From: Haliotis rubra
Taxonomy: Eukaryota
Direction of reading: 5' to 3'
NCBI RefSeq assembly: GCF_003918875.1
Contig: NW_025765403.1
Location: 1,364,001-1,428,000, forward strand
DNA length: 64,000 bases
The position numbers were made by a program, and so were the translations under genes. Shown here piece by piece: positions 31,140 through 58,236 of this stretch. The notes under the pieces are model-generated. The model saw nothing but the letters and a program-made list of their open reading frames with translations, did not search any database and was not told where the DNA came from. Each line of letters opens with the position of its first letter. Within the stretch, counting starts at the first letter, position 1.

Positions 31140-31270
31140 ACAAAAGCAAAACCAAACCGAAAGTAGGCACCCGTGCACATTTTACTAGTAACATTACATC
31201 AGCTGTATTTCCCAGTAACGTCGCCAGTTCTCGGAAACAGGAAGTGCAGTTGCGATAGGGGACTTCTTAG
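31140..31270 (+). promoter_or_regulatory. Putative promoter of ZNFX1-A with ISRE-like, GAS, ETS and kB-like sites
   Basis: AAACCGAAAGT 31154-31164, TTCTCGGAA 31228-31236, CAGGAAGTG 31238-31246, GGGGACTTCT ~31258; followed by CAG|GTAGT donors at 31369 and 31412. Confidence 0.55.
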
Positions 31271-31332
31271 TCGTTTAACGTCTCATTCAGCAATATTCCA
31301 ACTATAAGGAGAGCGGGGTGGTTGACGGGGCC

Positions 31333-31420
31333 ACTCTCCGTGGACAAGACTAATCGGACACATTGCAGGTAGTCTACTCTCCGCGGACAAGACTAATCGG
31401 ACACATTGCAGGTAGTCTAC
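31333..31420 (+). repeat. 43-bp tandem duplication containing a splice donor
   Basis: actctccg(t/c)ggacaagactaatcggacacattgcaggtagtct x2. Confidence 0.9.
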
Positions 31421-31845
31421 AAAATATATGTACACTATCAACCTGAACATAGAATTTCATGGTTCATTTCACATAAGCTCAGGCTAGTCTTGTGCCTGGT
31501 TTCATGGCGGATTTTCAAATTATTTCTTTATTCTCATAAACCACTTTGGTGGTACTAGCGCATATATTCTAAACATATATAAAAATACAAATTCAAATTC
31601 AAGATGTTTTTGCAGATAATATTTTCGTAAACTTTGTTTCATTGGGAAAAGAGGTTAGATCGGTGGGTAAATATTGTTTCCTCACAGTATCTAGTGCTTT
31701 GCAATGACAAATATAATGCTATTCTTCTCCGATGTTTTTAGAAATGCATAATTCGTACATCTCTTGAGGGTAAGCTGGACTACATCACATGCTGTAATCC
31801 ATGTGTAGCAGCCGTGAACGGTGGATCAGCAGTGTACATATGTTA

Positions 31846-31949
31846 GTTACACAGTGATTTGAAAGGGTGTACAGGATTGCAAGACCCTTGTAAATCCGTA
31901 TTTACTTGGGTCTTACAGTCCCGTACACCCTTTCAAAACACCATGTAAC
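31846..31949. repeat. Palindromic element
   Basis: gttacac...tttgaaagggtgtac...aagaccc / gggtctt...gtacaccctttcaaa...gtaac. Confidence 0.75.
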
Positions 31950-33669
31950 GAATTTATTACTCCTAAGATCTATTTATTTAGCTTATCTTTAAAAATATTA
32001 CATTCAGTAGAAAATAACAAAAAAGGACAATAAACTTGTATGTTTGATCGGACAGTCAACAACGGTATAAAGGGACATCACTCGTGATGGCTTAGTTTAT
32101 CATCAAATGATCGAATTTGAGTTTGTATTTTGTTAAACGACAAATGAAATACAGAAACATTATATTATATATATTTTTTATTGGCACAAACAAATTGGAA
32201 ATTATGGCAACCAGTTTATTACTCTGTTTATACTAATAATTGTATACGTCAACCCTAACATTTCGAAGCGATCAGCAGTTAGCCAGTTACATTCAATCTA
32301 GAACAACGTCTCTGTGAAATGTGCAGTGTCTTAGACGATGAGCAACACCATATAATATCATGTACCAAGTATAACGAAGAAAGGGAATCACTTATACACA
32401 CAATGCTATATTATGACCAAGAATTTACTACACTCTCAAAAAAAAAAAGAACAATTCTTAATAATTTTCACGAACAGAAGTCCTGAATTAATTTCCAAAA
32501 TATGTCACCATATCTTTACAACTTTAAATGAATGTTATATCTTACCATAGTCTCCTTATATATTATTTCCATGTCATTATACCACATGATTTCTAAAAAA
32601 ATTGTTATAATGTACATCATTTAGGTGTGAAATGTATCTATATTTCTTGTACCTACTGTGTAAATATTTGTAGCTTATAGAATATTGCCACTGTTTCTTC
32701 ATGGAATGCTATGCAATAAATATCTTATCTTATCTTATCTTATCTAAGGTCAAGGTCATTTGTACAACTCGCGTAGTGTGTCACTTGATAGATTTGATGG
32801 GATGTACTTCCGTGCACTCTGCAAAATCCGCATACATGCACACTCCGGCACAGCGATGACTTAATATAACATCACTGCCACAGGCTAATTTGCATATCAC
32901 GTGACCGGACTTTTCTCTTGTTTGTAATCAAACGCGCATATTCATAATAAGAATTGACTGGACTCACGAAAGCTTTTCGGCGCTCTTTTCATAATGTTTT
33001 ACATTGTTACATATATATTCTTCCACAACTGCGACAGTAAGGTCTATGACAGTACATATTTAGATATCAAACTGGCTGCATCGTTTGCTCTCCGTCGGCT
33101 TCGATGACAGCACGGAGCCGTACAACCTATGTAAAGAAAGGATCGCTACGCAAATCGAAATAGTGTTACATGTTTTTGGATATTTTCTCAGTGAAACTAA
33201 TTCATTCTATTAAAGATGTTTAGTTAGATGTGTAGACTCGTCAAAAATAAAAGAGTAAAAGAAATCTGTACATTATATTGAATGGACGGTGCAAGATGTG
33301 ACGAATCGTCACATTTTTCTGGCCTGTGGCAGAGGTACTATGCTGGCTTGCCGCATGGAACTCTGGGTAGGAGAGTGGCATACATGGTTTCGTATGCTTT
33401 GGCTATTGACCAATCAGAATTCGACAAATTTATCTTTAGGGTAATAATGGCATTTATAACTTTAATGGCTATTCACTGGGAGTTGTTTGTCGTCATACCA
33501 GTAAGTCCGAGGCAAGGCCATTGCTTAAATTACATTTGTGACGTCATTCTATTGTCTGTTCGCTCCATTACTTTTCAGGAATGGAGCGATGTGTACCAGT
33601 TTCAAAATAAAACCTTCATTTTGTCATTTTGACAACAGAAATATTCCCAATACTTCGAATGTAATTTAA

Positions 33670-35565: not shown

Positions 35566-36214
35566 GTTTTCACGAAAGCAGATATTTCTTTGAATAGTCA
35601 GGACGTGTGTATGTATAATACATGCATGCCGATTTTCTGTGCGTGGTGTATTTTCACAATAGAAGTCTGCCAAGCACAGGTGGCTCCCGTCCGTATCACA
35701 CCCAGCACCCGCCCCTTTGCACAGGTAACATGGCATACCAGTGACGTCCTTTCTGTCTGTGTGAGTGCCTCACATGCCACCATATCATTTATGTACCCCG
35801 TCTGAACGAGCCGCAACCCCTACCGGCCACCCCCTCAACCCCAACTCTCTCCTGACAAAAGGAAATGTGGAGTAGCGTGAAGAATATAGAACTCCGGCTA
35901 TGTGAGAGACCTGTTTTGACAGAATCTGGCTAAGTGAGAGGACACCGTAGGATGATATGTTTTACAGTTTTTCAGTTTGAAGTTCGAACTCATTGGTTTT
36001 GATTTTTTTTTGCTATTGCAAATGGGTAAAGTTTGTGTTGCCGTTAGTCTATACTAATATATTGTTTTTCTGGTGATTATTAGAATATTGAAGAAGATTA
36101 TTAAACATGATTGTGTATGTTAACCCTCCTGATATATTTATTTTTACGCATTCAAGGAATACCTATAGTGTAGATTGCTCTTTATTTTCTAGGGAGATGG
36201 TATAACCCAAAGCT

Positions 36215-36258
36215 ATGTCCAGACGTTCCTCAACACCGGGGTTTCTGTTCAACTCAGA
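36215..36258 (+). CDS. ZNFX1: ZNFX1-A first coding exon (MSRRSSTPGFLFNSE...)
   Basis: Acceptor ttttctag at 36192, ATG at 36215, phase-2 donor GA|GTAAG at 36259, which matches the phase of the acceptor ctttcag at 36515. Confidence 0.6.
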
Positions 36259-36515
36259 GTAAGATTTAATTCACGATTCAAGATATTTATTTGTAGAAAG
36301 ATTTCATTTTCATTCGTAACTTTGTAACCACAAACATTCAAGACATTGAATGACATTCAATGAAATCTTGATGCTTATTGCCGTAATACAATCTTGATTT
36401 CAAATGGGTTAAAATATTTCCATAAACATGTAATATGCTGCCATTACATATTAAGAATGTTTATCTGTAACGAATGTGAAATGGACAAAATTCAGATACA
36501 AATATGATCTTTCAG

Positions 36516-39500
36516 AATATCTGCCAGAAGTCATCACTACGAACATGAAGACAACACAGAACAGACACGTCGGTACGATCGTACAGGAGGGTCAGGGCGG
36601 AGGTGGGATGATGATGGTGGCGACCACGAAAGATCTGGAGAAGAAAGGGGAGTCAGAGCATGGTCGACAGACAGATCAATCAGCGGTGAACTAAGATGGG
36701 GAGAAGGAAGAGGTGGATCCAGAGGTCGAGGAAGAGGTAGATACTATGATGACAGAGGCACAGGTCACAGTAGTGGAGGTTTTAGAGGAAGAGGAACAAA
36801 TGTAGAAGGAGAGCGAGGGCATCACAGAGGGGGATACAGAGGAAGAGGAATCTGTGGAGATGGAGCGAGAGGACATCATAGCAGAGGTTATAGAGGAAGA
36901 GGACGAGGAGGCAGAAGAGAGGGACTGAATTTAACCCAACTTGAAGAACTCAGGGAAAAAGACCCTTCCACCATTGTAATGACGCTGGGATTGGAGTCAG
37001 GAATTGGCCTTTTCTTGAATCAAAAATCTCTTAATCAACGTGAGGTGTACACCTTTGTGAGTGTTATAGCCAAAGCATGTCGTTGCACAACTGCTCCTGA
37101 AAGTTTCAACAGAATTCTACTTACTATTCGACAGTCTCAATTTTATGAACATGTATCGGGTGTCTTGGGAAGTAGTATTCGCGGGTTGTCATTAACTGAA
37201 GAAGAAAGAAGAAACTTTCTTGGAGACCTGGCAATATTTATGAAGGAACTTTATATTCGGCTACCTCACTCTGCCATGGAAATGAAGGTTCTCGGTTTGG
37301 AGCATCTCTTGACAAATGAAATTCACAAAATGCAAAGGACATCTGACAACATTCCGCGGGACATTCTGTCAAACATTTCCGCACTCCAGGAACTAAAGGC
37401 TACTGTGCTTGACCAATCAAGGAGCAAGCAGGCAGAGAGGGATGAGCTCAAAGAGGGTGGCCCACCTGATGATTTCAGACATGTATCTATTTTTCCAAAT
37501 GCTGATGATATTCATCCAAGTGAAAAACCATTCCTCAGAAAAAACAAATCAGTTGGCGGCTACAGGGATCTGGACCATTATCTCGATGTACAATTCCGAC
37601 TTCTGAGGGAGGATTTTATTTGTCCCCTGAGAGAAGGCATAGAAGCCTACCTTGTTGCAGAAGCTCCTGGTAAGCGAGGACAGCGTTTGAAGGATATCAG
37701 AGTGTATCATGATGTGCACATTGTTAGGACTTTGTGCTCCAACAATGGTCTACTTCACAGAATATCTTTTGATGTGAGCAATCTTCAACGTGTTAGGTGG
37801 GAAAATTCGAAGAGACTCATTTATGGATCCTTACTTTGTCTATCAAAGGATAATTTTAAGACTCTCTTGTTTGCAACCATCACTGAGCGAGATCCTAAGC
37901 TACTGAGAGAAGGGTGTGTAGATGTACTTTTTGAAGAGTCTGAAGATCTTGACAAGAGGCACTTTGACACAAAGTTTGTCATGGTGGAGACAACAGCTTT
38001 CTTTGAAGCTTATCGTCATGTGCTACGAGGTTTACAAAAGATAAAGGAGGGAGACCTACCATTTGAAAAGTACATTGTTGCATGCAAAAACACTGTCAGT
38101 CCTCCAAAGTATCTCAAGGAGGCAGTGTCAATTGAAGGAAAATCACCAAAGTTTGATCTGCGCCCACTGATTGATGACAAAATTGATTTGCGGGAAGACA
38201 AACACCTACTTTCTCAAGGGCGTGAAGTAAGCTATTTCTTCAGTCATGATTCGAGATGTGGCAAAAGTGTTCATGTCTTGGAAAATAGGGACTGGCCCTC
38301 TCCAGAGACACTCCATGTTGATAATTCACAGTTCCAGGCCCTGAAAACAGCTTTGACAAAGGAGTTTTCAATCATACAAGGTCCACCTGGCACTGGAAAG
38401 ACTTATGTTGGGTTGAAAATTGTCAAAGCTCTTCTTCATAATGACCAGATGTGGAAAAGGCAGCAACTCACACCTATGTTGGTCGTGTGTTACACAAACC
38501 ATGCCTTAGATCAGTTTCTAGAGGGAATAATTAGTTTCTACAAGGGCAGTGTCATCAGAGTAGGCAGCAGAATTTCAAATGAGCAACTTGAACGTTACTC
38601 GTTGAGGGCTAATAGACAAAAGATGAGAAACGACAGGGACAAGGATCGAGATATGAAGAATGTTGGTAAAAGGCGATGGGAGACAAAAAACAGAATGCTT
38701 GAACTTCAGTATCAGATTGAAGAAGTTGGAATGAAATTAGAGGATGCCGAAAAGACAGTTTTGCATGAAGATGTATTGAGGCCATATATGAAAAGTCATT
38801 ATGACACAATATTAGCAACGATGAGAAGAATGCACAGACAACAAGAAACTGAATACCATCACAAGTTGCCATTTCCAATGTCCTTCATAGTAGAATGGCT
38901 TGGAGTTGGCAGCATGGAGGCTACAATTGCAACTTTTGGAGATCAGAGGCAAGACGCATTTGAACAGGAATATGATGAAGAAGTTGAGGAGATTGACGTT
39001 CAAGAAGAGGCAGGGATTGTCCAAGCACAGCGCCGGGTTCATGACATGGATACAGATGACTTCCCCACCAATGAGTTTGAAATTAAACAAAAGAAGATCA
39101 GAGGTCTCCAGAATCAAAGAGATAAATATGTGGCTTTAGATGTTGCCTCGTTTGACAAAAACCAAATGCCGGTAGGAACAGCAACAGGATTTCAATACAC
39201 AAGAAAGGAAAGAAAAAACATTAAGCGTCGAATGTTGAAGCAGCTAAAATCCACACAGAGAATGTGGGAAATGGAAGCACTTCGTGTTAGAGACCCATGG
39301 ATGCTGACCATGGAGGACAGATGGAGGCTTTACAGACACTGGGTGTACAAATTTTGTGAAAAGTTACAGAAGGATATACACGCAAAAGAGCAGAGCTACC
39401 GGGAGGTTGTGGCAGAATACAAAGAGCTGCAAATGAATGAAGACATGCAGATACTACGAGAAGCTACAGTTATTGGCATGACAACTACTGCAGCAGCACG

Positions 39501-42013
39501 TTATCAACAAGCCCTTGCAGAAATTGGTCCACGTATCATTGTAGTAGAAGAAGCAGCTGAGGTTCTTGAAGGACACATCATCAGCACTTTAAGCAAGAAG
39601 TGTGAACAACTGATACTCATTGGAGATCACAAGCAACTGAAACCTAACCCAACAGTGTATAATCTGGCCAAAAAGTTTAACCTAGATTTGTCATTGTTCG
39701 AAAGAATGATTGATAATGGAATCCATTGTGATACTCTCGCCCTTCAGCACAGGATGAGGCCAGAAATATCCACTGTGATGCGTCACATATATCCAAAACT
39801 TCAGGATCACCCATCTGTACTTCGCTACGAGAAAGTGAAGGGAATATCTGCCAACATGTTCTTCATAGATCACAACAACCAAGAGGAGCATGATACAGAT
39901 ATGATGAGTCATTCTAACACATATGAGGCAACATATATAGTTGCCCTCTGCAGTTATCTCCTGAAGCAGGGATATGACAAATCACGAATCACTGTCCTCA
40001 CAACCTATTCAGGTCAGCTGCTTAAACTGAAGAAGATGATGCCAAAACAGGACTTCCAAGGAATGAGACTGACAGTTGTTGACAATTACCAAGGAGAAGA
40101 GAACGACGTTATCCTGTTATCTCTTGTCAGAAGCAATGCTGAAGGAAGCGTTGGGTTTTTGAAAATAGAGAACCGCATATGTGTAGCTCTGTCAAGAGCT
40201 AAAATTGGACTCTTTGTCATTGGCAACTTTAATCTTCTTTCCCAGCAGAGTTTATTATGGAAGGATATCTTGACAGATCTGAAGAAGAACGGTAAAACGG
40301 GTCCAACATTGAACCTTTATTGCCAAAACCACCCCACAGAAACAGGAATCAGTGTTCAAAGCCCAGATGATTTCAAGAAAGCCCCTGAAGGGGGGCTGTC
40401 TGAAGCCATGTGTCTTCAGACTTGAATGTGGACACGTGTGCACATTGCTGTGTCATCCTTATGACCCTGAGCACAAAGATTATATTTGCAGGAAGCAATG
40501 CACCAAAACACTGCAGCAATGGTCACCAGTGTCCCCAGCGTTGCCATGAAGAATGTGGAAAATGCATGATACGTGTTGAAAAGATTATTCCAAAATGTCA
40601 ACACAAACAGATGGTTCCATGCTTCAAAGAGCCCAGCACATTTTCTTGCCAGGCCGAATGTAACACAGCCCTTGAGTGTGGACACACATGTGGAAACACC
40701 TGTTCCATGAAACATGGGTGTACAGCAGTCGTGAAAAACATTTAGATGCGGGCACACAGGCGACGTCCTTTGTACGAGGAAAGCATCAGCACAATGCGAA
40801 GCCAAATGTTCTGAACTTCTGAAATGTGGGCATAAATGTGAAGGTGACTGTACACGATGTCATGAAGGAAGGCTGCACATACCATGTCGCAAGATGTGTA
40901 AAGATACTCTGATCTGTGGACATGTCTGTGTATCTGGATGTTCTGAATGTAATCCATGCAGAAAAGCATGTCAAAATCGCTGTCAGCACAGAAAATGCAC
41001 GAAATATTGTGGGGAGCCCTGTGATCCGTGCAGTCAGCCATGCGTATGGGAATGTGAACATCACAGATGTACACTTCCCTGCTGCGAGCCTTGTGACAGA
41101 CCACCCTGCAATGAACCATGCAAGAGGAAGCTACCTTGTAAACACCCATGCATAGGTCTGTGTGGAGAACCATGCCCAAAACAATGCGGCATTTGCCACA
41201 AAGATGAAATCATGAAAGTAAATCCAACGCCTGGTGCACGATTTGTATTCCTTGAGGACTGTGGTCACATTGTAGAAGTGTCAGTACTTGACCACTATAT
41301 GAACCAAAACTCAGAGGAGATCAAACTGAAAGTCTGCCCACATTGTAAGACAGTGATCAGGCACAATGTGAGATATGGGTCTGTGGTCAAGAAGAATGTG
41401 AAGAATATTGAAGTCGTTAAAAAGCTCTGCAATGAGAAAAAGACAAGGTTCCACACAACGAAACAAAGACTTATGATGGAAGTGAGGTATGAGGAAGAAC
41501 AGGAAGAGAATGGCATGAAGACAACCATGTTCCACCGAGGTTACACCAACACAGTGGCCGGACTCTCTGCGCTGGAAAACCAGTTTCACCTCCTAGATGC
41601 ATTGAAAAAGGTATCTGCTGAATACAAAAAATATACAGTGACCACATTTGTGAATGACGATCCCTCAAGCTCAGAGGAGGTAGATTTGCTCTACAAATGG
41701 CTGAAAACTCCAAGACAAGTCTTCAGTGAGCAAGAGCAATACGATGCCAAGAATGAACTCCTCAGACACAGAGCAGTTTTGGTATATCTTAGATGTGGCC
41801 ATGAAAGACAGACTACACTGATGCGAATCTATTTGCCAATGCTGAAAGACGTTCTGTTGTCAGGAAAGCCATACACAGAGGAGAAGCAGACCAGAGTTAG
41901 AACTCTATTTAACATACTGGGGGATACCGTGCCCACTGATAAGGTACAACAGAAGGTGAAGCTGGTTGGCAATATAGGACCAGCTTCTGGAAAGTGGTTC
42001 TCCTGCAGGAGAG
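36516..42013 (+). CDS. ZNFX1: ZNFX1-A giant exon: RGG N-terminus, ARM-like region, SF1 helicase, NF-X1 zinc fingers, RING-like segment (3 apparent +1 frameshifts at ~40390, ~40510, ~40737)
   Basis: Motifs LEELREKDPSTIV, YLDVQFRLLREDFICPLREGI, QGPPGTGKT, VCYTNHALDQFLEG, VVEEAAEVLE, LIGDHKQL, QHRMRP, VDNYQGEE, RICVALSRAK, Cys/His-rich NF-X1 fingers, ARFVFLEDCGH...CPHCK. Donor GAG|GTGCGT at 42014. Confidence 0.92.
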
Positions 42014-42269
42014 GTGCGTACTACCTTTATCGACCTTTATTCACACACTGGGGCATAATGAACTTATACTCACTTTATAAGTTACTTTGTAAAAAATTTT
42101 GTAAGGTATCAACATTACAATATTGGTACATCTTTGGATTTTAAGAATTTCAGAACTGTATAGAAGACTATGTTGACATGTATATACTGGTACCCACATT
42201 CACATAACTGCATTTAAGACATATGTGAAATTTCGTGATTTATGTTAGCTAATTTCATGTCTCTTTTAG

Positions 42270-45009: not shown

Positions 45010-45045
<36 letters not shown>

Positions 45046-47029: not shown

Positions 47030-47206
47030 GTATGTAGACTGGTTGCACGCTAAACTATGTATGTCACTTGTATTTGCAAGTGCTAGTTTCTAAATAACAA
47101 GGCTTGTGTCACTGCAAGTGACATTTAATATAAACAGTTAATCAGTACGAGCATGTCTGATTTTGAATCTATGAACTAGTGTATTTGCTACTACAGCCAA
47201 ATCGTA

Positions 47207-47362: not shown

Positions 47363-47733
47363 TACTACAGCCAAACATCATAAGGAGCTACGCAAATACG
47401 TCGAGTAACTACATTATTTTGAATCTTTGGAATAGTGCAGTTGCTACTACAGTCAGCCCCCGCCACGAACAACGTAACTACGTCGATTTATCCACGGTTC
47501 GACATAACCTAAACTATGAATATAGAATGCATAGGAAGGGAACAAATCGTTCGCAATTCAGTTCGGCATATCGAAGCTCGACACAACGGTATTTAACTGA
47601 AAAACAACCCACAGTGTCATGGTGTCGATTACTTTGCCATGAATAGGGTATGTCCTTTGATAACGTCGCCATAGTGAGAGCATTGTAAATTATGTATGGG
47701 TTGCGTGAACGGTGCATTGTATTGATCAAAATG

Positions 47734-49241
47734 TACTAGGCACATAAAGAAACTGTGCATACAAAAAATTAAAATCTAAATTTATCAAACCTGTGTAGAC
47801 ACATAAGGATTTAAACTCAGAGATTAGTGACATGTATCCAACATGCAGGCACGTGCAACGTTCCGTGACGTCAGTGGGTTCGTCCTGGAGACGTGCAATA
47901 CGTTGTTGCACGTGCATTCCGGGAAAGAGAAACAGAGCAAATGAATGCCACACAATACTGTCACTTTGGAAAGCTCAACCCCTGCCCTTGCGATCGTTCA
48001 ACAACTTAAACGGCTATTGAAACGCATAGCATGCCAAGGCTCACGTCTGCACAACGTCATGAGGCCATTGGGATGGTCCGTGGGGGAATGTCTCAACGAC
48101 AAGTGGCTGCACATTTCCACTGCCACCGGAACACCATTTCTGCACTGGTGAGACGCAGAACACAAATGACGTCATCGATCGGCCACGTTCTGGACGTCCA
48201 CGTGTAACAACGCCAAGACAGGACAGATGGATAAGAGTGACCCATCGGCGCCACAGGTTTCAGATTGCAGTGATGACTGCCCGAACCATCCCAGGACTTC
48301 GCCGTATCCACCCCAACACAGTTCGACAACGTTTACGTCATCATGGGATCAGACCACGACGTCCCGCCATACAGCCTATCCTGACACAACGTCATCGACA
48401 AGCTCGCCGAATGTGGTGCCGAAATCATGTCCGCAGACCCTTGTTTTGGTGGAGAAATGTTGTTTTTACAGATGAGTCCAGGTTGAACATTTCCCATAGT
48501 GATGGACGTCAAAGTGCCTATATACGCGTAGGAGAACGTTATGCACAGGCCTGTGTCTTGGAGAGGAATCGCTTTAGTGGTGGTTCCGTGATGATTAGGG
48601 GTGGAATAACAGCACGCCAAAGAACTCCTTTGGTGATTGTTCAGGGCATCTTAACTGGTGTGGGCTACAGGGATCAGATTCTTCGACCTGTGGCAATTCC
48701 TTTTCTGCAACGTCATGGCCCTGGGTTAACATTCCAACAGGACAATGCCCGCCCTCATACGGCAAGGGTTGCTATGGATTTCTTGCAACACCACAACGTT
48801 GACTTACTGCCTTGGCCTGCAAATTCACCGGATCTCTCCCCGACAGAGCATGTTTGGGACGAGATGGATCAGCGTCTACGCCGTCTTCCTAATCCGCCAG
48901 ATAACGTCCTTGACCTTGCAACAGAACCTGAGAGAATCTGGCGTTACATCCCACAAGCCTTCCTTGCACGTTTGATAGGCTCTATGCGTCGTCGATGCAC
49001 TGCTGTTCTCAATGCCGATAGTAGACATACCCGTTATTGAGCTTGTGACATTGTCGTTTGACCCCTGTCCCGCTTGTGGACTCGTGACGTCTTTGTGATT
49101 GACTTTTCAATTGAAAATCTCCCGACTTGTTATAGTCTCATGATCCCTCCATTAAAGTTTATATGTAACTTTGACATGGTTATCGTACCAATCAACTGGG
49201 ATAATATTTTGACAATGCACAGTTTCTTTATGTGGCTAGTA
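47734..49241 (+). mobile_element. Tc1-family DNA transposon (DD34E), about 1.5 kb, decayed
   Basis: 27-bp TIRs tactag(g/c)cacataaagaaactgtgcat at both ends; TA-flanked right end. Confidence 0.9.
48031..49040 (+). pseudogene. Tc1 transposase pseudogene
   Basis: MPRLTSAQRHEAIGM HTH start, RSGRPRVT, FTDESR, FQQDNARPH, WPANSPDLSPTEHVW with 34 residues between the second D and E; frameshift near 48160; W>R in the MxWGG motif. Confidence 0.88.
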
Positions 49242-49599
49242 TATGAATCATATGTATGTAGGCTAGTTGGTGAATAATAGATCTTTGTGAATGATGTAAA
49301 ATAAATATAATTTCATCGTGTTTCTTTCTGTGACACTCAAGTGATTTCCTCCGTATAGACCAGTTTCAGAGACCAAAAGTCATTATTACAGCGATGTAAT
49401 ATCTGTTTGATTTAGTCAGATATCTCGACTAAATCTAATAACTTGATTTGATATAAAATAATGTCTCCCACAGAGAGTTGGACATAAGTTTTGCGTGGTT
49501 TGAGTTTCCATTTTCTGAACTTTGACTTATGTCAGATTTTGTCAGGTTTCCTTATCACTAACTGATCAACTGACAGGATCCTGTTAGCAGGAAACGCGT

Positions 49600-49822
49600 T
49601 TTGTTTGTTTGTCGTTTAACGCCACACTCAACAATATTCTACCTATATGTCGGTGGTTTGCAAATAATCCAGGGATTAACATCACGAGTATCGATCTACG
49701 CAAATGGGATGCTATGATATGTGTCTACCAAGTCAGCGAGCCTGACCACCCGATTCTGATAGTCGCATTTAACGACATGCATGGGTTGCTGAAGATCAAT
49801 CCTAACCCGGATCTTCACGGGT
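49600..49822 (-). mobile_element. SINE family B (degenerate)
   Basis: caagtcagcgagcctgaccacccgat...ccggatcttcacgggt. Confidence 0.75.
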
Positions 49823-50561
49823 ACAGGGCAAAGGAACTTCTAAACACTTGCTTACTTAAGTAAATGATGGTGGTCGAAGCTGTTGTTGTCCTCTTCTTTG
49901 AGGGGTCGAAACTGGACATCAAGATAATGGTCAAGATTCTGGTAACCACCGATGGTTTTATTCTTTCTCAGGAATATGCCCTTTAGCATATATGTCATTG
50001 GTATTTGGCATTATGGATAAAGCTCTAAAATCATCAGCTGTATTTCAGATTTGGCGGCCAAAGCTGTTGTTGTCCTCTGTTTCGAATTGTAAAAATTTCG
50101 TTTCGTTTAAAAATGTATGAAATAGAAAGGAAACAATTTCGTAACCAGGACTGTATTTCAAATTATAACCATATACCAGTATGTCATACTTGTATTTGTA
50201 AAGTTGTCACCCCGATACTAAACTTACAGCAATGCAACATGTATGCTATTTAGACAAGCACGTGTCAATGTGTGACGCTGTGTATCGCAGTGTTATCTTC
50301 TTTATGTTATTTATCCTGGCGCTCGGCATTAATGGGCAAGCAAGGACAGGTCGTCGAGTCCTGCTCAACTGATGTCGATGCTAAAAACTTGATTGATAAG
50401 ATAGGTTTATGATTTGTTGTATAGTTAATAGTTTGAAATGTGGAAAATAGGTGGTTTCGTTTTATAGTTGTCATTCTTTGTTTTCTCGATTTGTCTTTGT
50501 ATAATATGACATACATGTTTTATTACTATGTGATACAACTATACATCATTTTGTATTGTAG

Positions 50562-50627
50562 GTTCACAGGAGGAACGGGAGGTGATGGAGACGGAAGGAC
50601 GGCTGAGGATATTACATTTTGTGGAAG
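50562..50627 (+). other. Probable second (66-bp) exon of ZNFX1-B
   Basis: Acceptor ttgtattgtag, purine-rich body, donor GAAG|GTAAT; same length and position as exon 36193-36258 of copy A. Confidence 0.45.
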
Positions 50628-50835
50628 GTAATATAAAAAAATGCCTCCTGTAAAGCAGTTCTGAATTTGTGTATTGCAGACATCAATTTGAAAAGTAAAA
50701 CCTGTTGTCATGCGTGTATTTACGTATAAATAGGTATTTTAGCTCAACTGGGGCGTTTGGATTTCATGCAATGAATACCTGTGCTGAATGTGCGAAAACA
50801 CATGAAAAATGTGTTATAACATGCATCAAACACCC

Positions 50836-50975
50836 AGTTGTGGAATGGTTTAAACGTTCGTGCGTCATGCTGAAGGCCCAGGTTCGATTCCCCACTTGGG
50901 CACGATGTGTGAAGCCCTTTTCTGGTGTCCCACGTCATGGTATTGCTGGGATATTGCTAAAAGCAGCGTAAAAAT
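50836..50975 (+). mobile_element. SINE family A (degenerate)
   Basis: ggttcgattccccac...tttctggtgtccc...atattgctaaaagc. Confidence 0.75.
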
Positions 50976-51092
50976 TCCTTGGGCTCTGAGCTCTGTGACT
51001 TCGCTTCACACCCGTCGATTGTTGGTCAAAATTAAGTCCGTCCTAATATAGCTGAAATACATTACACAATTTTTCTATTTTTTAACAATTAG

Positions 51093-54000
51093 ATGTGTCG
51101 CGCACAACCAGATACAGAAGGCGGCGAAACAATTGAAAAGAAAAACGATCGTGATCAAAGTGTCAGAAGAGAAGCAGGCGATTTGAACGGAAGAATCAGA
51201 GAGTTTGACAGAACAGACATTTGGAAAGATCGGCGTTCTGGTGAAGCAGATATCCAACGTCATGCTGATTTCAAAGACTTGAAATTGCACGGAGATGAAT
51301 ACACAGGCGTGGAGAGAATAGTATACAAGAGGCTGAGCAATTGGAGAGACAGAGATTCTCGTAGTATAGACAGCAATCAGAATGAAGGTTTCAAGGAAGC
51401 TCCTTCAGACAGAAACACAGGCCAAGAGGGAGTCGATTCCTTCAGGACAGACAATTGGAGAGTTCGGGCGCCCAGGCCTCCCATATTAAACAAGATGTAG
51501 GTTTCAAAAAGTTTGACAGGCTCACAGATCGAAACCAAGGCCCAGCTGATTCTACAAAAACAGGCAACTGGAGGGATCGGTGTCCTGAGGGAACAGATAT
51601 CAAGCAGCATGTTGGCTTTAAAGCCCGGAAAAAACTCAGATGGAAACAGCCAACAATGCCAAGTTGATTCTACAAGAACAGGCAACTGGAGAGATCGGGG
51701 TTCTGAGGGACCAAATAACAAGCAGCATATATGCTTGAAAGCGCGAGAAGTAAATTCAGATGGAACCAGCCAACAATGCTCAGTTGATTCGTCGAGAACA
51801 AGTAATTGGCGTGATCGGTGTCCTGAGGGACCAAATATCAAGCAGCATGTAGGATTCAAAACACGAGAAGTACACTCAGGTGGACAAGCAAGACAATACA
51901 CAACTGATTCTACAAGAACAGGCAACTGGAGAGATCGATGTTCTGAGGGAGCAGATATCAAACGGGAAGTTCACACAGATAGAGAAACAGGACAGCATGG
52001 AAGAATTGTGAAAGGAACAGGTACACAAAGATATGAAAACTCCCGTGGCCTGGTTTTGTCCCAGCTCGAAGAACTGAAAAATAAGGATCCTTCTACTATT
52101 CTGTTCACACTGAATTCAAGAATACATAGTTTGATGGATCAACATACTCTTCCACCCAATGCTGTGTATACATTTGTAAGTCTCATAGCACAGGGCATCC
52201 AATGCAAAACTGAGTCCAGCAATGTCAGCAAAATGCTACTAGCTGTACAAGAGTCTAACTTCTATGAACATGTTTCACATATTTTGGTGTTACTTGATAC
52301 AAATCTGACAGAAGAAGACAAGACTCGATGTTTCCTAAAGGATCTGATAACCATTCTTTGTGAATTGTACATTCGACTGCCACATGCCTTTATGAAAGTA
52401 AAGGTACTTGGCTTGGAGGAACAGTTGACATTGGTAACCCAAAAGCTGCAAAGAAAATCCAATATCGTTGATGACGAAATTGTTTCTAATTTGAGTGAAC
52501 TCCAAAAACTGAAATATTCAGTTCTTCAGAAATCAGTGACAGTTAAAGAGGAGGACAGAGAAGGTGAACCTCCTGATGACTTTAGAGCTTTATCCATACT
52601 GCCAAATGCCAGTGATATCTATGGTAAAGAGATCATATTCCTGAGAAAGAATAAAACCATCGGTGGTTACAAGAATCTTGACCATTATCTAGATGTCCAG
52701 TTTCGACTCCTCAAAGAAGATTTTGTTGGTCCATTGAGGGATGGTATTGGAGCTGTTGCTGAAAACACCAAGTTGAAACAAGGACAGAGGATAAATTACG
52801 TCCGAGCATATCATGGTGTACAAATCGGTAGGAAAGTTTGTTCAACCAGTGGAATATTGCACAGACTGCACTTTGATGTAAGTGGTCTGCAGGAGATGGT
52901 GTGGGAGGAGTCCAAGAGTCTCATCTATGGTTCGTTAGTGTGCCTGCTGCCAGATGGCTTTGACACATTTATCCTGGCCACGATCACTGACAGAGACCCC
53001 AAACGTCTCAGATCAGGCATCGTAGATGTATCGATTGAATTTGGTCAGTTTGAAATAGGATCTGACATGAAATATACCATGATTGAAACAACAGCTTTCT
53101 TCGAAGCCTATCGCCATGTGCTCAGAGCTTTGCAAGAGATTCACGAAGGGGAACTTCCTTTTGAAAAGTACATCATTCACTGTGAAACCAGTCAGGACTC
53201 TCCAAGATACCTAACAAGATATTCCGGATCATCAGTTTATGACTTGCAATCACTGACAGAAAAAGCTTTGCCTGAACATATGGACGACCTTGCTTATGAA
53301 TCTACTGTAGCAGTGAATATTTTGGAAGATGAAGATTGGCCTACAGCAGCTACTCTCGGTTTGAATCCGTCACAGTACGAATCTTTGAGGAACGCCTTGA
53401 CAAAAGAGTTTTCAATCATACAAGGTCCACCAGGAACAGGCAAAACGTTTATCGGTCTGAAGATTGCTAAAGCTCTGCTCCATAATAGTCATCAATGGAA
53501 GAAGCCTATGTTGATTGTGTGTTACACAAATCATGCTTTGGATCAATTTCTTGAGGGAATCATTAGCTTTCACAGCAAAGGTGTCATCAGAGTTGGCAGT
53601 AGGATTTCAAAAGAATGCCTTGAAGGCTACTCACTAAACGTTCTAAGGTGGAGAAATCGAAGCAAACTCATGAAGCATATCAGATGGGAACACAGAGAAG
53701 CCATTGAATGGTTTCAAGAAATGCTGGAGGACGCACATGTGACACTGGAGAATGCAAGAGAGACAATATTACATGAAGACACTCTTTGTCCATACATGCA
53801 TATGTCTTATGACAAGTTGCTGAAAGGGATGAAGACCAAACTTGCAGAGCTTGAGCTTCATCTTGGCCATGAGGTGGAATTTCCTCGATGTGTCAGCCAA
53901 GAATGGCTTGGAGTGGGAAAACTTGAAGCCACTGGATATTTGCCTCAAGGCGTATTTTCAGACATATGAGTTTGGGGAAGAAAAGAAGAAGACAACAATG

Positions 54001-57000
54001 TTACTTTGGGTATGTCAACACCTCAAAATACGTCTGCCCAGAATGAGAATTTCTATGGCTTCCAGTTTCCCAAATGGCAAAGAAAAAGTGTGAAACGACG
54101 CATGCTGGAACAACTTAGGTCATCTGATCGAATGACAGAAGATGAAGCAGAACAAATTTGTGAGCCATGGAGTCTGTCTATGCATGACAGATGGCGGCTG
54201 TACAGATACTGGATTTTCAAACATCGCGAACAGCTGGAAAGAAAAATAAGGCTCTACGAAGAATTGTACAACGAAGTTTCGACAGACTTAAAGAGATTAC
54301 AAGAGACCGAGGACAGGATATTATTGGGAAATGCTACAGTGATTGGCATGACAACGACAGCAGCAGCTCGGCATCGACAAATGCTAGCCGAGATTGGGCC
54401 TAGCATCATCATGATAGAGGAAGCCGCTGAGGTTCTTGAAGGACACATCATCAGTACTTTAACCAAGAAGTGCGAACACCTGATACTCATCGGGGACCAC
54501 AAACAACTGAAGCCAAACCCAACCGTTTACAACTTGGCAAAACGGTACCACCTTGATTTGTCCTTGTTCGAGAGGATGGTGACAAATGGGATTCACTGTG
54601 ACACTCTGACTCTTCAGCATAGAATGAGGCCAGAGATATCGTCTTTGTTGCGCCATATTTATCCTAACCTTGAGGATCACCCATCTGTGTTTGATTACGA
54701 AAACGTGAAGGGGATTTCTACCAACATGTTCTTCATACAACACAGAAATCAAGAGGAAACTGATGAACAGATGGTTAGCCATTCCAATGAGTATGAAGCA
54801 GTCTACATTGTTGCTTTGTGTAGTTACCTGTTAAAGCAAGGATATGACCATTCAAAAAATCACTGTGCTCACAACATATGCAGGACAACAGCACAAAATA
54901 AGGAAGTTAATGAGGCAGGGTAATTTCCCAGATGTGAAACTCACAGTTGTTGACAACTACCAAGGTGAAGAAAATGATATAGTCCTGTTGTCTCTTGTCA
55001 GAAGCAATCCTGAAGGAAGTGTGGGATTTTTGAAAATCGAAAACCGCATATGTGTAGCTTTGTCACGCGCAAAAATTGGGCTCTTTGTTATAGGTAACTT
55101 TGAGCTTCTCGCTATGCAGAGCTTACTCTGGAGAGATATCCTGGAAGATTTGAAGAAAAAGAAGCAGGTAGGACCCACCTTGCATTTGTATTGTCAAAAC
55201 CATCAGAGTGGAACCGGAATCAACATTGAAAGTCCAAATGATTTTGAAAAGGCTCCTGATGGAGGTTGTCTAAAACCGTGTGCATTCAAACTCAAATGTG
55301 GCCATGTTTGTTCCAAATATTGCCATCCCTATGACCCTGAACACAAGGAATACCTTTGTATGAGGTCTTGCACTCAGATACTTTGCAGTAAAGGTCATCC
55401 ATGTCCACGACTGTGTCACGAGAAATGTGGACCATGTGTCGTGCCTGTTCAAAAGATCATCCCGTCTTGTGGCCATGAGCAGATCGTCCCATGTTTCCAG
55501 AATCCGAAGACATTCTCCTGTATGAATGATTGTGAGAAACTTTGCAGCAAAGGTCATACATGTCCTCGACCGTGCCACGAAAATTGTGAACCTTGTGCCG
55601 AGCCTGTTCTAAAGATCATCCCGTCTTGTGGCCATGAGCAGATGGTCCCATGTTCCCAGGATCCGATCACGTTCTCGTGTAAGAATAATTGTGAGAAAAC
55701 ATGTAGAAATGGTCATCCATGTCAACAACCGTGTCACGAGAAGTGTGGACCATGTGTCGTGCCTGTTGAAAAGATCATTCCGTCTTGTGGCCATGAACAG
55801 ATCGTCCCATGTTTCCAGGATCCGGAGACATTCTCGTGTAAGAATGATTGTGAGAAACTTTGCAACAAAGGTCATCCATGTCCACAACCGTGTCACGAAA
55901 AGTGTGGACCATGTGTCGTGCCTGTTCAAAAGATTATTCCGTCTTGTGGCCATGAACAGATCGTTCCATGTTTCCAGGATCCACACGACTTCTCATGTCG
56001 GGGCAATTGCGAAACGGATCTTGACTGTGGGCACAGATGTGGAGAAGCATGTGGGAAAGCACATCAATGCAGAGCAACAATTAAGAAGACATTCAGATGT
56101 GGACATGTGGAAGAGGTCTTGTGCATTAACAAAGACACGGTAGAGTGTTGGGTCAGATGCGGCGAGAAGCTTGACTGTGGACACATTTGTGATGGTAACT
56201 GCAACAGGTGTCACGAAGGAAGGCTTCATGTACCATGCCAGAAGATGTGCAAGGAAATACTGATCTGTGGCCATGAGTGTGGCGCCAAGTGTTCACATTG
56301 TCCTCCCTGTAGGATGGCATGTGAAAACCGCTGTCCCCACGAAAGGTGCACTAAATTTTGTGGTGAAATTTGTGACCCATGCATAGCACCTTGTGAATGG
56401 AAATGTGAACATTTTAAATGCACTTTGCTCTGCGATGAGCCTTGTGACAGACCACCCTGCAATGAACCATGCAAGAAGAAACTGCCCTGTGAACATCAAT
56501 GTATTGGCTTGTGTGGCGAACCATGCCCAATGCAGTGCAGGTTTTGCAACGCTGCTCTAGTAAGTAATGTGAGTGGAAAGCCGAATGCAAGATTCGTTTT
56601 CCTGGAAGACTGTGGGCATATTGTGGAGGTTACAAGCCTCGATAGGCACATGGCATCCAAATCAGACGAAATCCAACTGAAGAAATGTCCACACTGTAAA
56701 ACAATAATCAGATACAACATGAGGTATGGAAATGTGATCAAATCCATTCTCAGAAAACTGGAAGTTGTAAGGAAGCAGTGCAATGAACAGGCAGAGACGG
56801 TTCTGGACACAGAAGAAAGGATGATGATTGAAGTGATGGAGGATGATGAATGCGAGGGAAATACAAAAGAAATGATGCTGCGCCAAGGATTTACCAACAC
56901 TGTGGCAGGTCTCACAGCACTACAGAACCAGTTTACCCTCCTGGATGAGCTTTCAAAGATTACCGATGAATATGACCCGTTTTGTTGGTATAGAAGGCAT

Positions 57001-57388
57001 CGCTCGACATATTGATTTGGCCACTAAAGAAACAAAACTATTCCGCACATGGCTGATGATACGAAGACAAGCCTTCAGCAGACAAGACGAATCAGACGCT
57101 CAGAATGAACTGCTTAGACACAAAATGATTATTCACATGCTGGACTTAGAATTTCTTCTGGCGCCAAATCTAAAGAAAGTGACATACAGGGTTACATGCT
57201 GGTTCTGAAAGACATCCTTGTTTCTGGCAAATCTTACTCAGCTGAAAAACAAATCAGGGTTGAAAGAATATTTGACAGACTTTGGGGTACTCTCAACATC
57301 AAGTTCTCAGAGGAGATTGACAATGCAAAGGTGATGATTACACCAACAACTGGAATTGCATCTGGTCACTGGTTGTCCTGTCGCCATG
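51093..57388 (+). CDS. ZNFX1: ZNFX1-B giant exon: NWRDR-repeat N-terminus, ARM-like region, SF1 helicase, expanded NF-X1 fingers, RING-like segment; 5 apparent frameshifts and 1 in-frame TGA (possible pseudogene)
   Basis: Consecutive ORFs 51093, 51455, 51513, 54006, 54844, 56945 and 57196 are collinear with copy A. Motifs QGPPGTGKT, IEEAAEVLE, LIGDHKQL, VDNYQGEE, RICVALSRAK, ARFVFLEDCGH. Donor CATG|GTAAAT at 57389. Confidence 0.88.
51330..51965 (+). repeat. Coding ~120-bp (40-aa) tandem repeat in the ZNFX1-B N-terminus
   Basis: gattc...a(c/t)tgg(a/c)g units at 51435, 51548, 51666, 51786 and 51906. Confidence 0.9.
55381..56016 (+). repeat. Coding 159-bp (53-aa) tandem repeat x4 in the NF-X1 finger region of ZNFX1-B
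   Basis: Units begin at 55381, 55540, 55699 and 55858. Confidence 0.95.
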
Positions 57389-57691
57389 GTAAATATGTTG
57401 TTTGAGACTTTAAAAACGAGATGATTAACATTACTTGGTTTAATTAATAACGGCTGATTTTCTGTTAATTAAACCCTGATACTTCTGTAAACACTTATCC
57501 GTACATTTAATTTAATTTGCGTTATTACATACGAGATTAGGTTGCATACCCAGCTTTTATTATGTGCCTGAACATCTGCATTTTGAACAGATGAGTTTAA
57601 GAACATGGATGATGTTTGGTCTTTATTGTATAGATCTACAAAGATGGGTCACCCTGAGCCTGTCCGGGGCGAAAGATGTTAAAGGTATGAC

Positions 57692-57811
57692 GCCGACCCA
57701 TTCGAATCCCCACATGGGTACTATGTGTGAAGCCTATTTCTGGTGTCCCCCGCCGTGATGTTGCTGGAATATTGCTAAAAGCGGCGTAAAACCAAACTCA
57801 GTCAGTCAGTC
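57692..57811 (+). mobile_element. SINE family A in the last intron of ZNFX1-B
   Basis: Consensus body and tail. Confidence 0.8.
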
Positions 57812-58114
57812 TTTGGTGTCCACCAATCATAGTTTAAATAAGTTCTTGTTTCTTCGTTTGGAAAACCACAAACAATAGTATTCAAGCTAATGATGTAAGG
57901 CCGATGAAAATTGAACATTCATGTCTGATATCATGAAGTTGTTCGGGAAACATCAACTAGGTCACATAGCTTCTCAGGACGAAAGGCTTTCTATTGGATA
58001 TATTGTTTCTTAAATGCCACTGTGTTGCCGCTGTTCTACAAAGGGAGATGTTTTCATGCAATCGTATGATTGGACTCACATTTAATTATTGAGTGACTAC
58101 TCTTGCATTTACAG

Positions 58115-58236
58115 GGCATGTCTATTCAAGAGGAGAATGTCGGTATGGCTCCAATATTCGTCATATTCGTGACTGCCCCCGATGTCTCAGCAGAGTGGGT
58201 CAGAAGACACCACAAAAGATTCTGAAGACAAAGTGA
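58115..58236 (+). CDS. ZNFX1: ZNFX1-B terminal exon, RZ finger (GHVYSRGECRYGSNIRHIRDCPRCLSRVGQKTPQKILKTK*)
   Basis: Acceptor ttgcatttacag at 58114; a phase-1 join gives GHWLSCRHGHVY..GEC...CPRC; TGA at 58234-58236; AATAAA at ~58765. Confidence 0.8.

What the first reader, a model, noticed from the sequence alone, without database searches (positions are those of the whole stretch)
31140..58236. Tandem pair of ZNFX1 antiviral helicase-E3 genes diversified module by module
Seen: two full-architecture ZNFX1 copies with the same exon plan (non-coding exon, 66-bp exon, giant exon, phase-1 RZ exon) and a conserved helicase core, but different N-terminal IDRs, zinc-finger copy number and RZ finger. 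Known: ZNFX1 is single-copy in mammals, an interferon-inducible RNA sensor and ubiquitin ligase, and acts in small-RNA inheritance granules in C. elegans. Inference: a lineage-specific antiviral/RNA-surveillance cluster in which paralogs retune condensate targeting, RNA/E2 engagement and ligase output. It could be a sensor/decoy or sensor/executor pair.
Basis: partly seen in the sequence, partly recalled or inferred. Interest (0 to 1): 0.8.

Follow-up and report, generated by a model that had tools for sequence, protein, structure and literature searches.

The report
Abalone ZNFX1 gene array, two members
The region holds two neighbouring, diverged copies of the antiviral RNA-helicase/ubiquitin-ligase gene ZNFX1, part of a four-gene array shared by abalone species; the copies are real and long kept by selection, but in this draft assembly both reading frames are interrupted, so it is an ordinary immune-gene expansion, not a new system.

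Summary
The window is Haliotis rubra contig QXJH01000146.1. Two ZNFX1 paralogues (A, 36193-42376; B, 50562-58236; both on the + strand) are really there. Their N-terminal repeats, zinc-finger unit number and C-terminal finger differ as described.

Three corrections are needed.
- It is not a pair. A and B are the first two genes of a head-to-tail array A-B-C-D. C and D lie just past the window end, and the order is conserved in H. asinina and H. cracherodii.
- Neither giant exon is open in this assembly. A has three clustered frame-shifting indels, and its NCBI model is a truncated 1317-aa protein. B has at least three frame-shifting indels, two premature stops and a 114-nt deletion, and has no protein model. 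The orthologues in H. asinina and H. rufescens are fully open.
- dN/dS is 0.10-0.25 in the structured domains, also downstream of the breaks, and the H. rubra branch is not faster. The breaks are therefore very young or are consensus errors of a Nanopore assembly polished once.

The two N gaps lie in the non-coding A-B spacer, whose flanks are collinear with H. asinina. Multi-copy ZNFX1 in molluscs is already known.

The parts
36193..42376 (+). ZNFX1 paralogue A. The 66-nt ATG exon is 36193-36258 (ATG at 36215), the giant exon 36516-42013, and the phase-1 last exon 42270-42376. Domains: RG-rich 54-nt repeats 36772-36933, ZNFX1 domain 37684-37995, helicase AAA_11 38317-39645, AAA_12 39682-40227, then the NFX1-type zinc-finger array and C-terminal region. 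The giant exon is interrupted by three clustered frame-shifting indels inside the zinc-finger array.
   Evidence: Pfam. PDB 9q9z ZNFX1, E=1e-256. NCBI model P0001, 1317 aa, 100% identical, truncated. Splice sites read. Orthologues P0002 (H. asinina, 1880 aa) and P0003 (H. rufescens, 1859 aa) are open. Indel count and context.
50562..58236 (+). ZNFX1 paralogue B. The 66-nt ATG exon is 50562-50627, the giant exon 51093 to about 57390, and the phase-1 last exon 58115-58236. Domains: 120-nt (40-aa) N-terminal repeats 51536-51961, ZNFX1 domain 52788-53093, helicase core 53361-55098, 159-nt zinc-finger repeat units 55376-55982. It is interrupted by at least three frame-shifting indels, two premature stops and a 114-nt deletion. 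The reading register at the start also differs from the H. asinina model.
   Evidence: Pfam on the separate open pieces. tblastn of the orthologue P0006 (H. asinina, 2265 aa) in two frames. DNA alignment to L004. Splice sites by alignment to the H. asinina exons. Repeats. No H. rubra protein model for B in the protein collection.
31048..31246 (.). Block conserved with the region upstream of the H. asinina A orthologue. This is unverified.
   Evidence: blastn gives 73% identity to L005 6873-7072. No transcript data are available. ISRE-like motifs are not above chance in the window.
42377..50561 (.). The A-B spacer. It holds both assembly gaps (44524-44698, 46508-46693), SINE copies, a Tc1/mariner-like element and an inverted fragment of B. 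It is non-coding with respect to ZNFX1.
   Evidence: N runs. Collinear blocks with H. asinina L004 1-10000 on both sides of each gap.
47731..49244 (+). Tc1/mariner-like transposon in the spacer. It has 39-nt terminal inverted repeats and one open 325-codon frame (48063-49037).
   Evidence: Pfam DDE_3 1.3e-12 and HTH_Tnp_Tc3_2 1.7e-7. Inverted repeat arms 47731-47769 and 49206-49244.
49783..50125 (-). Inverted, non-coding copy of a piece of B's own ZNFX1-domain coding sequence, about 450 nt upstream of B's ATG exon.
   Evidence: tblastn hits on the minus strand. Arms 49892-49978 and 52634-52720 are 97% complementary. The same feature is present upstream of the H. asinina B orthologue.

Best explanation
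The finding is the first half of a conserved, head-to-tail array of four ZNFX1-type genes (A-B-C-D) of abalone.

Each gene encodes an SF1 RNA helicase with an N-terminal low-complexity region, an armadillo/ZNFX1 domain, a stalk of NFX1-type zinc fingers and a C-terminal ubiquitin-ligase region. A, B and C arose by tandem duplication in the Haliotis stem lineage. D is an older paralogue.

Since then the copies have kept the helicase core under purifying selection. The N-terminal repeats were replaced, a 53-aa zinc-finger unit was amplified in B, and the last finger degenerated in A and B.

By homology with human ZNFX1, I infer that they bind viral or aberrant RNA, polymerise, and signal or restrict through ubiquitylation. 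This was not shown here. A lacks the cysteine that aligns with the RZ catalytic cysteine. If it ligates, it would have to use the RING/U-box-like (Miz-like) module, which both copies keep at sequence level.

The reading-frame interruptions in this assembly are, for A, most likely consensus errors of the Nanopore-based assembly (about 0.7). For B the question is open (about 0.5 errors, 0.5 a young pseudogene or null allele).
For: **Identity and source.** One search gives P0001 at 100% identity, H. rubra. Searches place the window on the contig (record = window + 1364000).

**Family.**: helicase motifs I, Ia, II, III and VI are intact in both copies.

**Array.**
- C (P0004) and D follow on the same contig, just past the window end.
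- A is followed by B on the H. asinina chromosome.
- B is followed by C and then D in H. cracherodii.
- The B orthologue P0121 is on the same H. rufescens contig as the A orthologue.

**Age.** A neighbour-joining tree on 1029 columns gives (A,B) 100%, +C 99%, sister to Gigantopelta copies 100%, and D with another Gigantopelta copy 96%.

**Selection.**
- dN/dS between H. rubra and H. asinina is 0.26 for A and 0.35 for B.
- By domain, helicase lobe 2 gives 0.10 and 0.15, and the zinc fingers 0.22 and 0.19. These regions include the stretches downstream of the breaks.
- The relative-rate test shows that the H. rubra branch has fewer private replacements than the H. asinina branch: A 54 against 83, B 118 against 145.

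**Breaks as errors.**
- A's three indels fall within 114 codons of a 1835-codon exon.
- Two of the three lie in single-base runs of 6-7.
- Their net length change is zero.
- The shifted stretch still reads as conserved fingers in the orthologue's register, with 4 private changes in 114 sites.
- The neighbour C is a 'LOW QUALITY PROTEIN' with two frame changes.
- The assembly was wtdbg Nanopore plus two rounds of Racon and a single round of Pilon, merged with DBG2OLC (PMC6774278).

**Ligase module.**
- C's last exon matches Pfam RZ at 2e-16, and its GEC cysteine aligns with RNF213 chain residue 4556. That is C4516 if the 40 extra residues of the construct are N-terminal.
- C4516 and ZNFX1 C1860 are named as the catalytic cysteines in preprint 10.1101/2025.10.14.682297.
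- A lacks that cysteine in all three species. B has it only in H. rubra.
- The segment with the invariant C-G-H ... C-P-x-C pattern is conserved between A and B, 59% over 295 aa.
- In an AlphaFold model (pLDDT 88.9), the best small-domain matches are RING and U-box domains, but only weakly (E at least 0.25).

**Function in molluscs.** ZNFX1 is over-expressed in bivalves and gastropods infected by dsDNA viruses (Blasi et al. 2022, as cited in PMC12585102).
Against: - No read-level or transcript evidence could be reached. The only search that could have found independent H. rubra fragments returned just the window's own ORF. 'Error' against 'real lesion' therefore rests on indirect arguments.
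- The density of frame-shifting indels in A, B and C (about one per 2 kb of giant exon) is far above what the assembly's 94.6% complete BUSCO score suggests for the genome as a whole. Either this locus was polished badly or the lesions are real.
- B also has two premature stops and a 114-nt deletion. Nanopore consensus errors rarely produce these.
- The count of indels and stops in B fits a pseudogene aged about 1% neutral divergence, which the rate tests cannot detect.
- The antiviral role is inferred from homologues only.
- The Miz-like assignment is weak.
Confidence: 0.7

Rival explanations
1. The interruptions are real. B is a young unitary pseudogene or a null allele in H. rubra. A is a truly truncated gene that makes a 1317-aa protein with N-terminal region, armadillo domain and helicase but no zinc-finger stalk or ligase module. 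In that case the array is decaying in this species.
For: - NCBI models A as a 1317-aa protein without a quality flag. The collection holds no protein for B beyond ORF fragments.
- B carries stops and a 114-nt deletion as well as indels.
- The ratio of indels to stops in B is about what neutral decay gives.
- The lesion density is far above the genome-wide error level implied by BUSCO.
Against: - There is no excess of private amino-acid changes on the H. rubra branch.
- dN/dS stays low downstream of the breaks.
- A's three indels are clustered in 114 codons, mostly in single-base runs, with zero net length change.
- Three adjacent genes would all have to be hit very recently, while every orthologue in three other species is open.
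Confidence: 0.3
2. A and B form a functional two-part system (sensor with decoy, or sensor with executor). One copy would have lost ligase chemistry and act through the other.
For: - A-type proteins lack the RZ catalytic-site cysteine in three species. The neighbour C keeps a canonical RZ finger.
- Human ZNFX1 polymerises and ubiquitylates in trans (preprint 10.1101/2025.10.14.682297).
- Gene order has been kept since before the Haliotis radiation.
Against: - Nothing here shows interaction or co-expression.
- The unit is four genes, not two.
- B's catalytic-site residue varies between species (Cys, Ser, Arg), which looks like drift rather than a fixed division of labour.
- Conserved tandem order is the default for young tandem duplicates.
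Confidence: 0.1
3. The two copies are an assembly artefact, such as uncollapsed haplotypes or a mis-join across the N gaps.
For: The assembly needed haplotig purging and the window contains two gaps.
Against: - A and B are only about 51% identical in protein.
- Each has its own orthologue at 85-89% DNA identity in H. asinina, in the same order and orientation, with collinear spacer blocks across both gaps.
Confidence: 0.01

Closest known systems
[quoted passage not shown]
   Same: The order of modules is the same: low-complexity N-terminus, armadillo/ZNFX1 domain, SF1 helicase with insertions, NFX1-type finger stalk, C-terminal region and terminal finger. A aligns to 9q9z over residues 137-1295 with E=1e-256.
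   Different: The human gene is single-copy, while here there are four arrayed genes. In A and B the terminal finger no longer matches the Pfam RZ model, and A lacks the catalytic-site cysteine. The N-terminal regions are unrelated repeats. B carries extra 53-aa finger units.
ZNFX1 gene families of other molluscs and invertebrates (Blasi et al. 2022, Fish Shellfish Immunol 121:456, not held in the library; three Aplysia genes, PMC9334734)
   Same: These are multi-copy ZNFX1 genes with lineage-specific duplications. Over-expression on dsDNA-virus infection is reported in bivalves and gastropods (PMC12585102). One search lists several paralogues per species in many invertebrates.
   Different: This is a specific Haliotis array (A, B and C are Haliotis-only duplicates) with coding minisatellites that change copy number between species. 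I found no description of it in the library.
RNF213 RZ finger
   Same: The neighbour C has a canonical RZ finger that aligns to RNF213, including the catalytic-site cysteine.
   Different: A and B keep the W-x2-C-x2-G-H ... C-P-x-C ligand pattern. They lose the GECG/IGG-x-H signature and give no match to RNF213 or to Pfam RZ.
C. elegans ZNFX-1 (germ-granule small-RNA inheritance factor)
   Same: It belongs to the same protein family (from established knowledge and review PMC11959080).
   Different: No evidence here bears on a germline or small-RNA role.

Membership tests
[quoted passage not shown] | ZNFX1 domain (Pfam PF25396) N-terminal to the helicase | tested here: met
   A 1.1e-36, B 1.1e-27.
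[quoted passage not shown] | SF1 (Upf1-like) helicase core, AAA_11 plus AAA_12, with intact motifs I, Ia, II, III and VI | tested here: met
   Pfam. Motifs found in A and in the separate pieces of B. In B the core is split over three frames or pieces in this assembly.
[quoted passage not shown] | The closest solved structure is ZNFX1 itself rather than Upf1, aquarius or Sen1 | tested here: met
   A gives 9q9z at E=1.2e-256, against Upf1 at 7e-39. C gives the same result. B was not run separately.
[quoted passage not shown] | Array of NFX1-type Cys/His fingers after the helicase | tested here: met
   Eight to ten finger cores in the intact orthologues. Cys/His columns are invariant across 50 family members and present in A. 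Pfam's own zf-NF-X1 model did not report a hit at the thresholds used.
[quoted passage not shown] | C-terminal RZ-type finger with its catalytic cysteine | tested here: not met
   No Pfam PF20173 hit for A's or B's last exon, nor for the full-length orthologues P0002, P0006 and P0121. C gives 2e-22. The cysteine aligned to the RNF213 catalytic site is absent in A and present in H. rubra B only. The four-ligand pattern is kept, so this is a degenerate RZ finger, not a missing one.
[quoted passage not shown] | Miz-like (U-box/RING-like) second ligase domain | tested here: inconclusive
   A conserved C-G-H ... C-P-x-C segment is present in A and B. In the model of A's C-terminal region (pLDDT 88.9), the best small-domain matches are RING and U-box, but with E at least 0.25. 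No solved structure of that part of ZNFX1 was available for comparison.
[quoted passage not shown] | One uninterrupted coding sequence | tested here: not met
   In this assembly A has three frame-shifting indels. B has at least three, plus two stops and a deletion. The orthologues are open.
[quoted passage not shown] | Induced by virus infection or nucleic-acid mimics | not testable with these tools
   No expression data were available. ISRE-like motifs are not enriched.
Decaying pseudogene | Disabling lesions | tested here: met
   taken as the assembly stands.
Decaying pseudogene | Relaxed constraint (dN/dS towards 1, faster branch) | tested here: not met
   dN/dS is 0.10-0.25 in structured domains, also downstream of the lesions. 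The H. rubra branch is not faster. A pseudogene younger than about a tenth of the branch cannot be excluded.

The most novel reading that the evidence does not exclude
The abalone array may be a division-of-labour system. The A-type and most B-type proteins have lost the RZ catalytic cysteine but keep the helicase, stalk and RING-like module. They would co-polymerise through their armadillo domains with the canonical, RZ-competent C protein. Their different N-terminal repeats and stalk lengths would then set which RNAs or condensates recruit ubiquitylation. A smaller oddity could add self-regulation: the conserved inverted copy of B's own coding sequence just upstream of B could form a long RNA duplex if it is transcribed.
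Probability: 0.1. Interest if true: 0.6.

Novelty: new member of a known kind. Interest (0 to 1): 0.3.

Why it matters
Abalone suffer lethal herpesvirus disease, and ZNFX1 is one of the few conserved RNA-sensing effectors that invertebrates share with humans. A dated, ordered array with natural variants of the stalk length, the N-terminal repeats and the RZ catalytic site offers a ready comparative series for asking what each ZNFX1 module does.

On the practical side, the H. rubra reference mis-represents at least one and perhaps three genes of this array. That would mislead expression, selection and breeding-marker studies that rely on its gene models.

Tried and rejected
1. **Independent sequence of B.** I searched the protein collection with B's 317-aa middle piece, hoping for read-derived H. 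rubra fragments spanning a break. Only the window's own ORF came back. The question of error against real lesion therefore stays open.
2. **DNA of the H. rufescens B orthologue (P0121).** It is not on record. The outgroup for B was therefore used at protein level only.
3. **ISRE-like promoter motifs.** Three matches against 1.6 expected, and 24 of 100 shuffles reach that number. I dropped this line.
4. **B's in-register stops read from a global alignment.** Both fall where the local alignment is poor. An apparent 38-codon shifted block disappeared in a cleaner alignment. I count only the indels that one search supports.
5. **Fold search of A's C-terminal model.** Nothing significant; RING and U-box matches are only suggestive.
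6. **tRNA search.** ARAGORN found no tRNA in the SINE copies.
7. **Phage search.** A search with the transposase DNA was empty and irrelevant.
8. **First phylogeny script.** It timed out and was rerun with a faster distance method.
9. **Spliced model not searched.** I did not search or fold the joined model across the last intron. Exons were searched one by one by reference, and the intact orthologue proteins stood in for the junction.
10. **Haplotig or mis-join artefact.** Rejected.

**Transparency.**
- A few short consensus patterns (helicase motifs, finger cores, an ISRE pattern) were typed from general knowledge as search patterns.
- Early mechanical ORF listings show where frames end. ZNFX1 is a host gene, but this report still gives counts and kinds of breaks only.
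- No contig that I would take for human was met.
- PDB alignments to human ZNFX1 and RNF213 were printed by the tool. I used them only to locate the catalytic-site cysteine.
Full report
**Source and gaps.** The best protein hit of copy A is a 100% identical NCBI model from Haliotis rubra (P0001). The look-up places it on contig QXJH01000146.1 of GCA_003918875.1, with record coordinate = window + 1364000.

The window has two N runs, 44524-44698 and 46508-46693. Both lie in the spacer between the stop codon of A (42376) and the ATG exon of B (50562). No coding exon abuts them, so there is no frame to preserve across them.

Blocks on both sides of each gap, and in the island between them, match the A-B spacer of H. 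asinina chromosome CM074529.1 in the same order and orientation. The join of A and B is therefore not a scaffolding artefact.

**What is there.** Both copies carry the Pfam ZNFX1 domain and the AAA_11/AAA_12 SF1 helicase core. A aligns to the solved structure of ZNFX1 (9q9z) with E=1e-256, far better than to Upf1 or aquarius. Helicase motifs I, Ia, II, III and VI are intact in both. A and B are about 51% identical over about 1070 residues.

- A has a 66-nt exon with the ATG (36193-36258), a giant exon (36516-42013) and a phase-1 last exon (42270-42376), read directly and matched to P0001 and P0002.
- B has a 66-nt exon (50562-50627), a giant exon (51093 to about 57390) and a phase-1 last exon (58115-58236). 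These were placed by alignment to the annotated exons of the H. asinina orthologue.
- The non-coding first exons cannot be checked without transcripts. A conserved block at 31048-31246 is the only support for A's.

**Modular differences are real.**
- A's N-terminus is RG-rich with 54-nt repeats. B's is built of 120-nt (40-aa) repeats, with 3.6 copies here and 7.8 in H. asinina.
- B carries a tandemly repeated 159-nt (53-aa) zinc-finger unit, with 3.8 copies here and 2.8 in H. asinina. A has a single such unit.
- Within one species, A-B identity is 0.29 in the N-terminal region, 0.48 in the armadillo region, 0.54 and 0.77 in the two helicase lobes, 0.63 in the fingers, 0.44 in the C-terminal region and 0.37 in the last exon.

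**Not a pair but an array.**
- On the same contig, just beyond the window end, lie a third gene (C = P0004, 1893 aa, 'LOW QUALITY PROTEIN') and a fourth (D, 1757-aa model), both on the + strand.
- In H. asinina a 1880-aa A orthologue ends about 9.5 kb upstream of the B orthologue P0006.
- In H. cracherodii the 3' end of a B orthologue precedes C, which is followed by D.
- In H. rufescens the A and B orthologues are on one contig.
- A neighbour-joining tree (1029 columns, 100 bootstraps) groups A with B (100), then C (99). This clade is sister to two Gigantopelta copies (100), and D pairs with a third Gigantopelta copy (96).

A, B and C are therefore Haliotis-stem tandem duplicates that predate the radiation of the genus. 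D is older.

**Neither copy is open in this assembly.** The giant exons of the orthologues are single open frames: 1840 and 1829 codons for A, 2306 for B, 1856 for C.
- **Copy A.** In H. rubra, A's exon changes frame three times within a 114-codon stretch of the zinc-finger array. NCBI's model is consequently a 1317-aa protein without stalk or ligase region.
- **Copy B.** B has three frame-shifting indels in the 5.4 kb after its N-terminal repeats. It also has two premature stops that are not consequences of those shifts: one in the N-terminal repeats and one at the junction of a 114-nt deletion in the helicase insertion. Its start-exon register differs from the H. asinina model, which an in-frame ATG at the first codon of the giant exon might bypass. 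No H. rubra protein model for B exists in the collection.
- **Copy C.** C also needs two frame changes.
- I give counts and kinds only.

**Are the breaks real?**

For error:
- The assembly is wtdbg Nanopore plus two Racon rounds and one Pilon round, merged with a DBG2OLC hybrid (PMC6774278).
- A's three indels are clustered in 6% of the exon. Two lie in single-base runs of 6-7, and their net length change is zero.
- Read in the orthologue's register, the shifted stretch has only 4 private replacements in 114 sites.
- One of B's three indels is in a 6-base run.
- Selection tests see no decay. dN/dS against H. asinina is 0.26 (A) and 0.35 (B), and 0.10-0.25 in helicase lobe 2, fingers and C-terminal region, which are parts downstream of the breaks.
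- With H. rufescens as outgroup, H. rubra has fewer private replacements than H. asinina: A 54 against 83, B 118 against 145.

For real lesions:
- The density of about one per 2 kb is well above what a 94.6% complete BUSCO score implies genome-wide.
- B's stops and deletion are not typical consensus errors.
- B's mix of indels and stops is what about 1% of neutral divergence would give, which is too young for my tests to detect.

I put A at about 0.7 error and B at about 0.5. The one search that might have found independent H. rubra sequence returned nothing new.

**How it most likely works (inferred from homologues).**
- Human ZNFX1 is an RNA-binding SF1 helicase. It is auto-inhibited by an insertion, has a rigid zinc-finger stalk, and polymerises through its armadillo domain.
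- It also has a two-part ligase: a Miz-like domain that binds E2, and an RZ finger with catalytic C1860, equivalent to RNF213 C4516 (preprint 10.1101/2025.10.14.682297; review PMC11959080).
- Mollusc ZNFX1 genes are reported as strongly induced by dsDNA-virus infection (Blasi et al. 2022, as cited in PMC12585102).
- In the array, C has a canonical RZ finger (Pfam 2e-22). Its GEC cysteine aligns to RNF213 chain position 4556, which is 4516 if the construct's 40 extra residues are N-terminal.
- A-type proteins of three species have Gln or Val at or near that position and a shorter loop. B has Cys in H. rubra, Ser in H. asinina and Arg in H. rufescens. Neither A nor B, nor their intact orthologues, matches the Pfam RZ model.
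- Both keep the conserved C-G-H ... C-P-x-C segment upstream. In a confident model of A's C-terminal region (pLDDT 88.9), its best small-domain matches are RING and U-box folds, though not significantly.

A and B may therefore ligate only by the one-step RING-like route, or depend on C in mixed polymers. That is a hypothesis, not a result. I did not search the joined spliced model. Exons were searched one by one, and intact orthologue proteins covered the junction.

**Comparison and novelty.** By every family feature except an intact RZ finger and an open frame, A and B are ZNFX1 genes. Several paralogues per species are seen in Branchiostoma, Gigantopelta, Patella, Lottia, Potamilus and others, and three in Aplysia (PMC9334734). 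Expansion as such is therefore known.

What is specific here is a dated four-gene Haliotis array, coding minisatellites in the N-terminus and stalk that differ in copy number between species, and loss of the RZ catalytic-site cysteine in the A lineage. I rate it a new member of a known kind, with interest 0.3.

**Verdict.** The main added value is the correction that both gene models are interrupted in this reference, and that the unit is a conserved array rather than a pair.

Noticed in passing
window 49783-50125 (-), paired with 52573-52720: An inverted, non-coding copy of about 340 nt of B's own ZNFX1-domain coding sequence sits about 450 nt upstream of B's ATG exon. Its central 87 nt are 97% complementary to the exon. 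H. asinina has the same feature (two tandem copies, 87% and 80% complementary), so it is old, and in H. rubra it was probably homogenised by gene conversion. If it is transcribed with the gene it could form a long RNA duplex.
   Followed up: partly
window 47731-49244: A Tc1/mariner-like element lies in the A-B spacer. It has 39-nt terminal inverted repeats (85%) and one open 325-codon frame with DDE_3 and HTH_Tnp_Tc3_2 domains.
   Followed up: partly
window 35412-35569, 46046-46207, 46236-46389, 47210-47371, 50835-50973, 57653-57814: A SINE-like repeat family of about 155 nt with a B-box-like head. Copies sit in introns and spacers of the array and also in the H. rufescens and H. asinina loci. 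ARAGORN calls none of them a tRNA.
   Followed up: partly
window about 28300-30900: A GT-rich minisatellite built from 29-nt units in higher-order repeats of 77-106 nt. It produces long spurious ORFs on the minus strand.
   Followed up: no
window 23767-24195 (-): An exon of an LHFPL-type tetraspan gene (Pfam L_HMGIC_fpl, 9e-24). It is the upstream neighbour of the array, on the opposite strand.
   Followed up: no
L002 10001-16629 and 22165 onwards (H. rubra contig, just past the window end): The third and fourth ZNFX1 genes of the array. C is flagged LOW QUALITY PROTEIN and needs two frame changes. C is the only one of A, B and C with a canonical RZ finger.
   Followed up: partly
L004 15466-15914 (H. 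asinina B orthologue): NCBI's model P0006 skips one 159-nt zinc-finger repeat unit as if it were an intron, although the giant exon is open throughout. The protein is probably 53 residues longer than modelled.
   Followed up: partly
window 51536-51961 and 55376-55982, against L004 10917-11853 and 15466-15914: The in-frame coding minisatellites of B differ in copy number between species. The 120-nt unit has 3.6 copies against 7.8, and the 159-nt finger unit has 3.8 against 2.8.
   Followed up: yes
window 31333-31418: A perfect-to-98% tandem duplication of a 43-nt unit sits next to the conserved block upstream of A.
   Followed up: no
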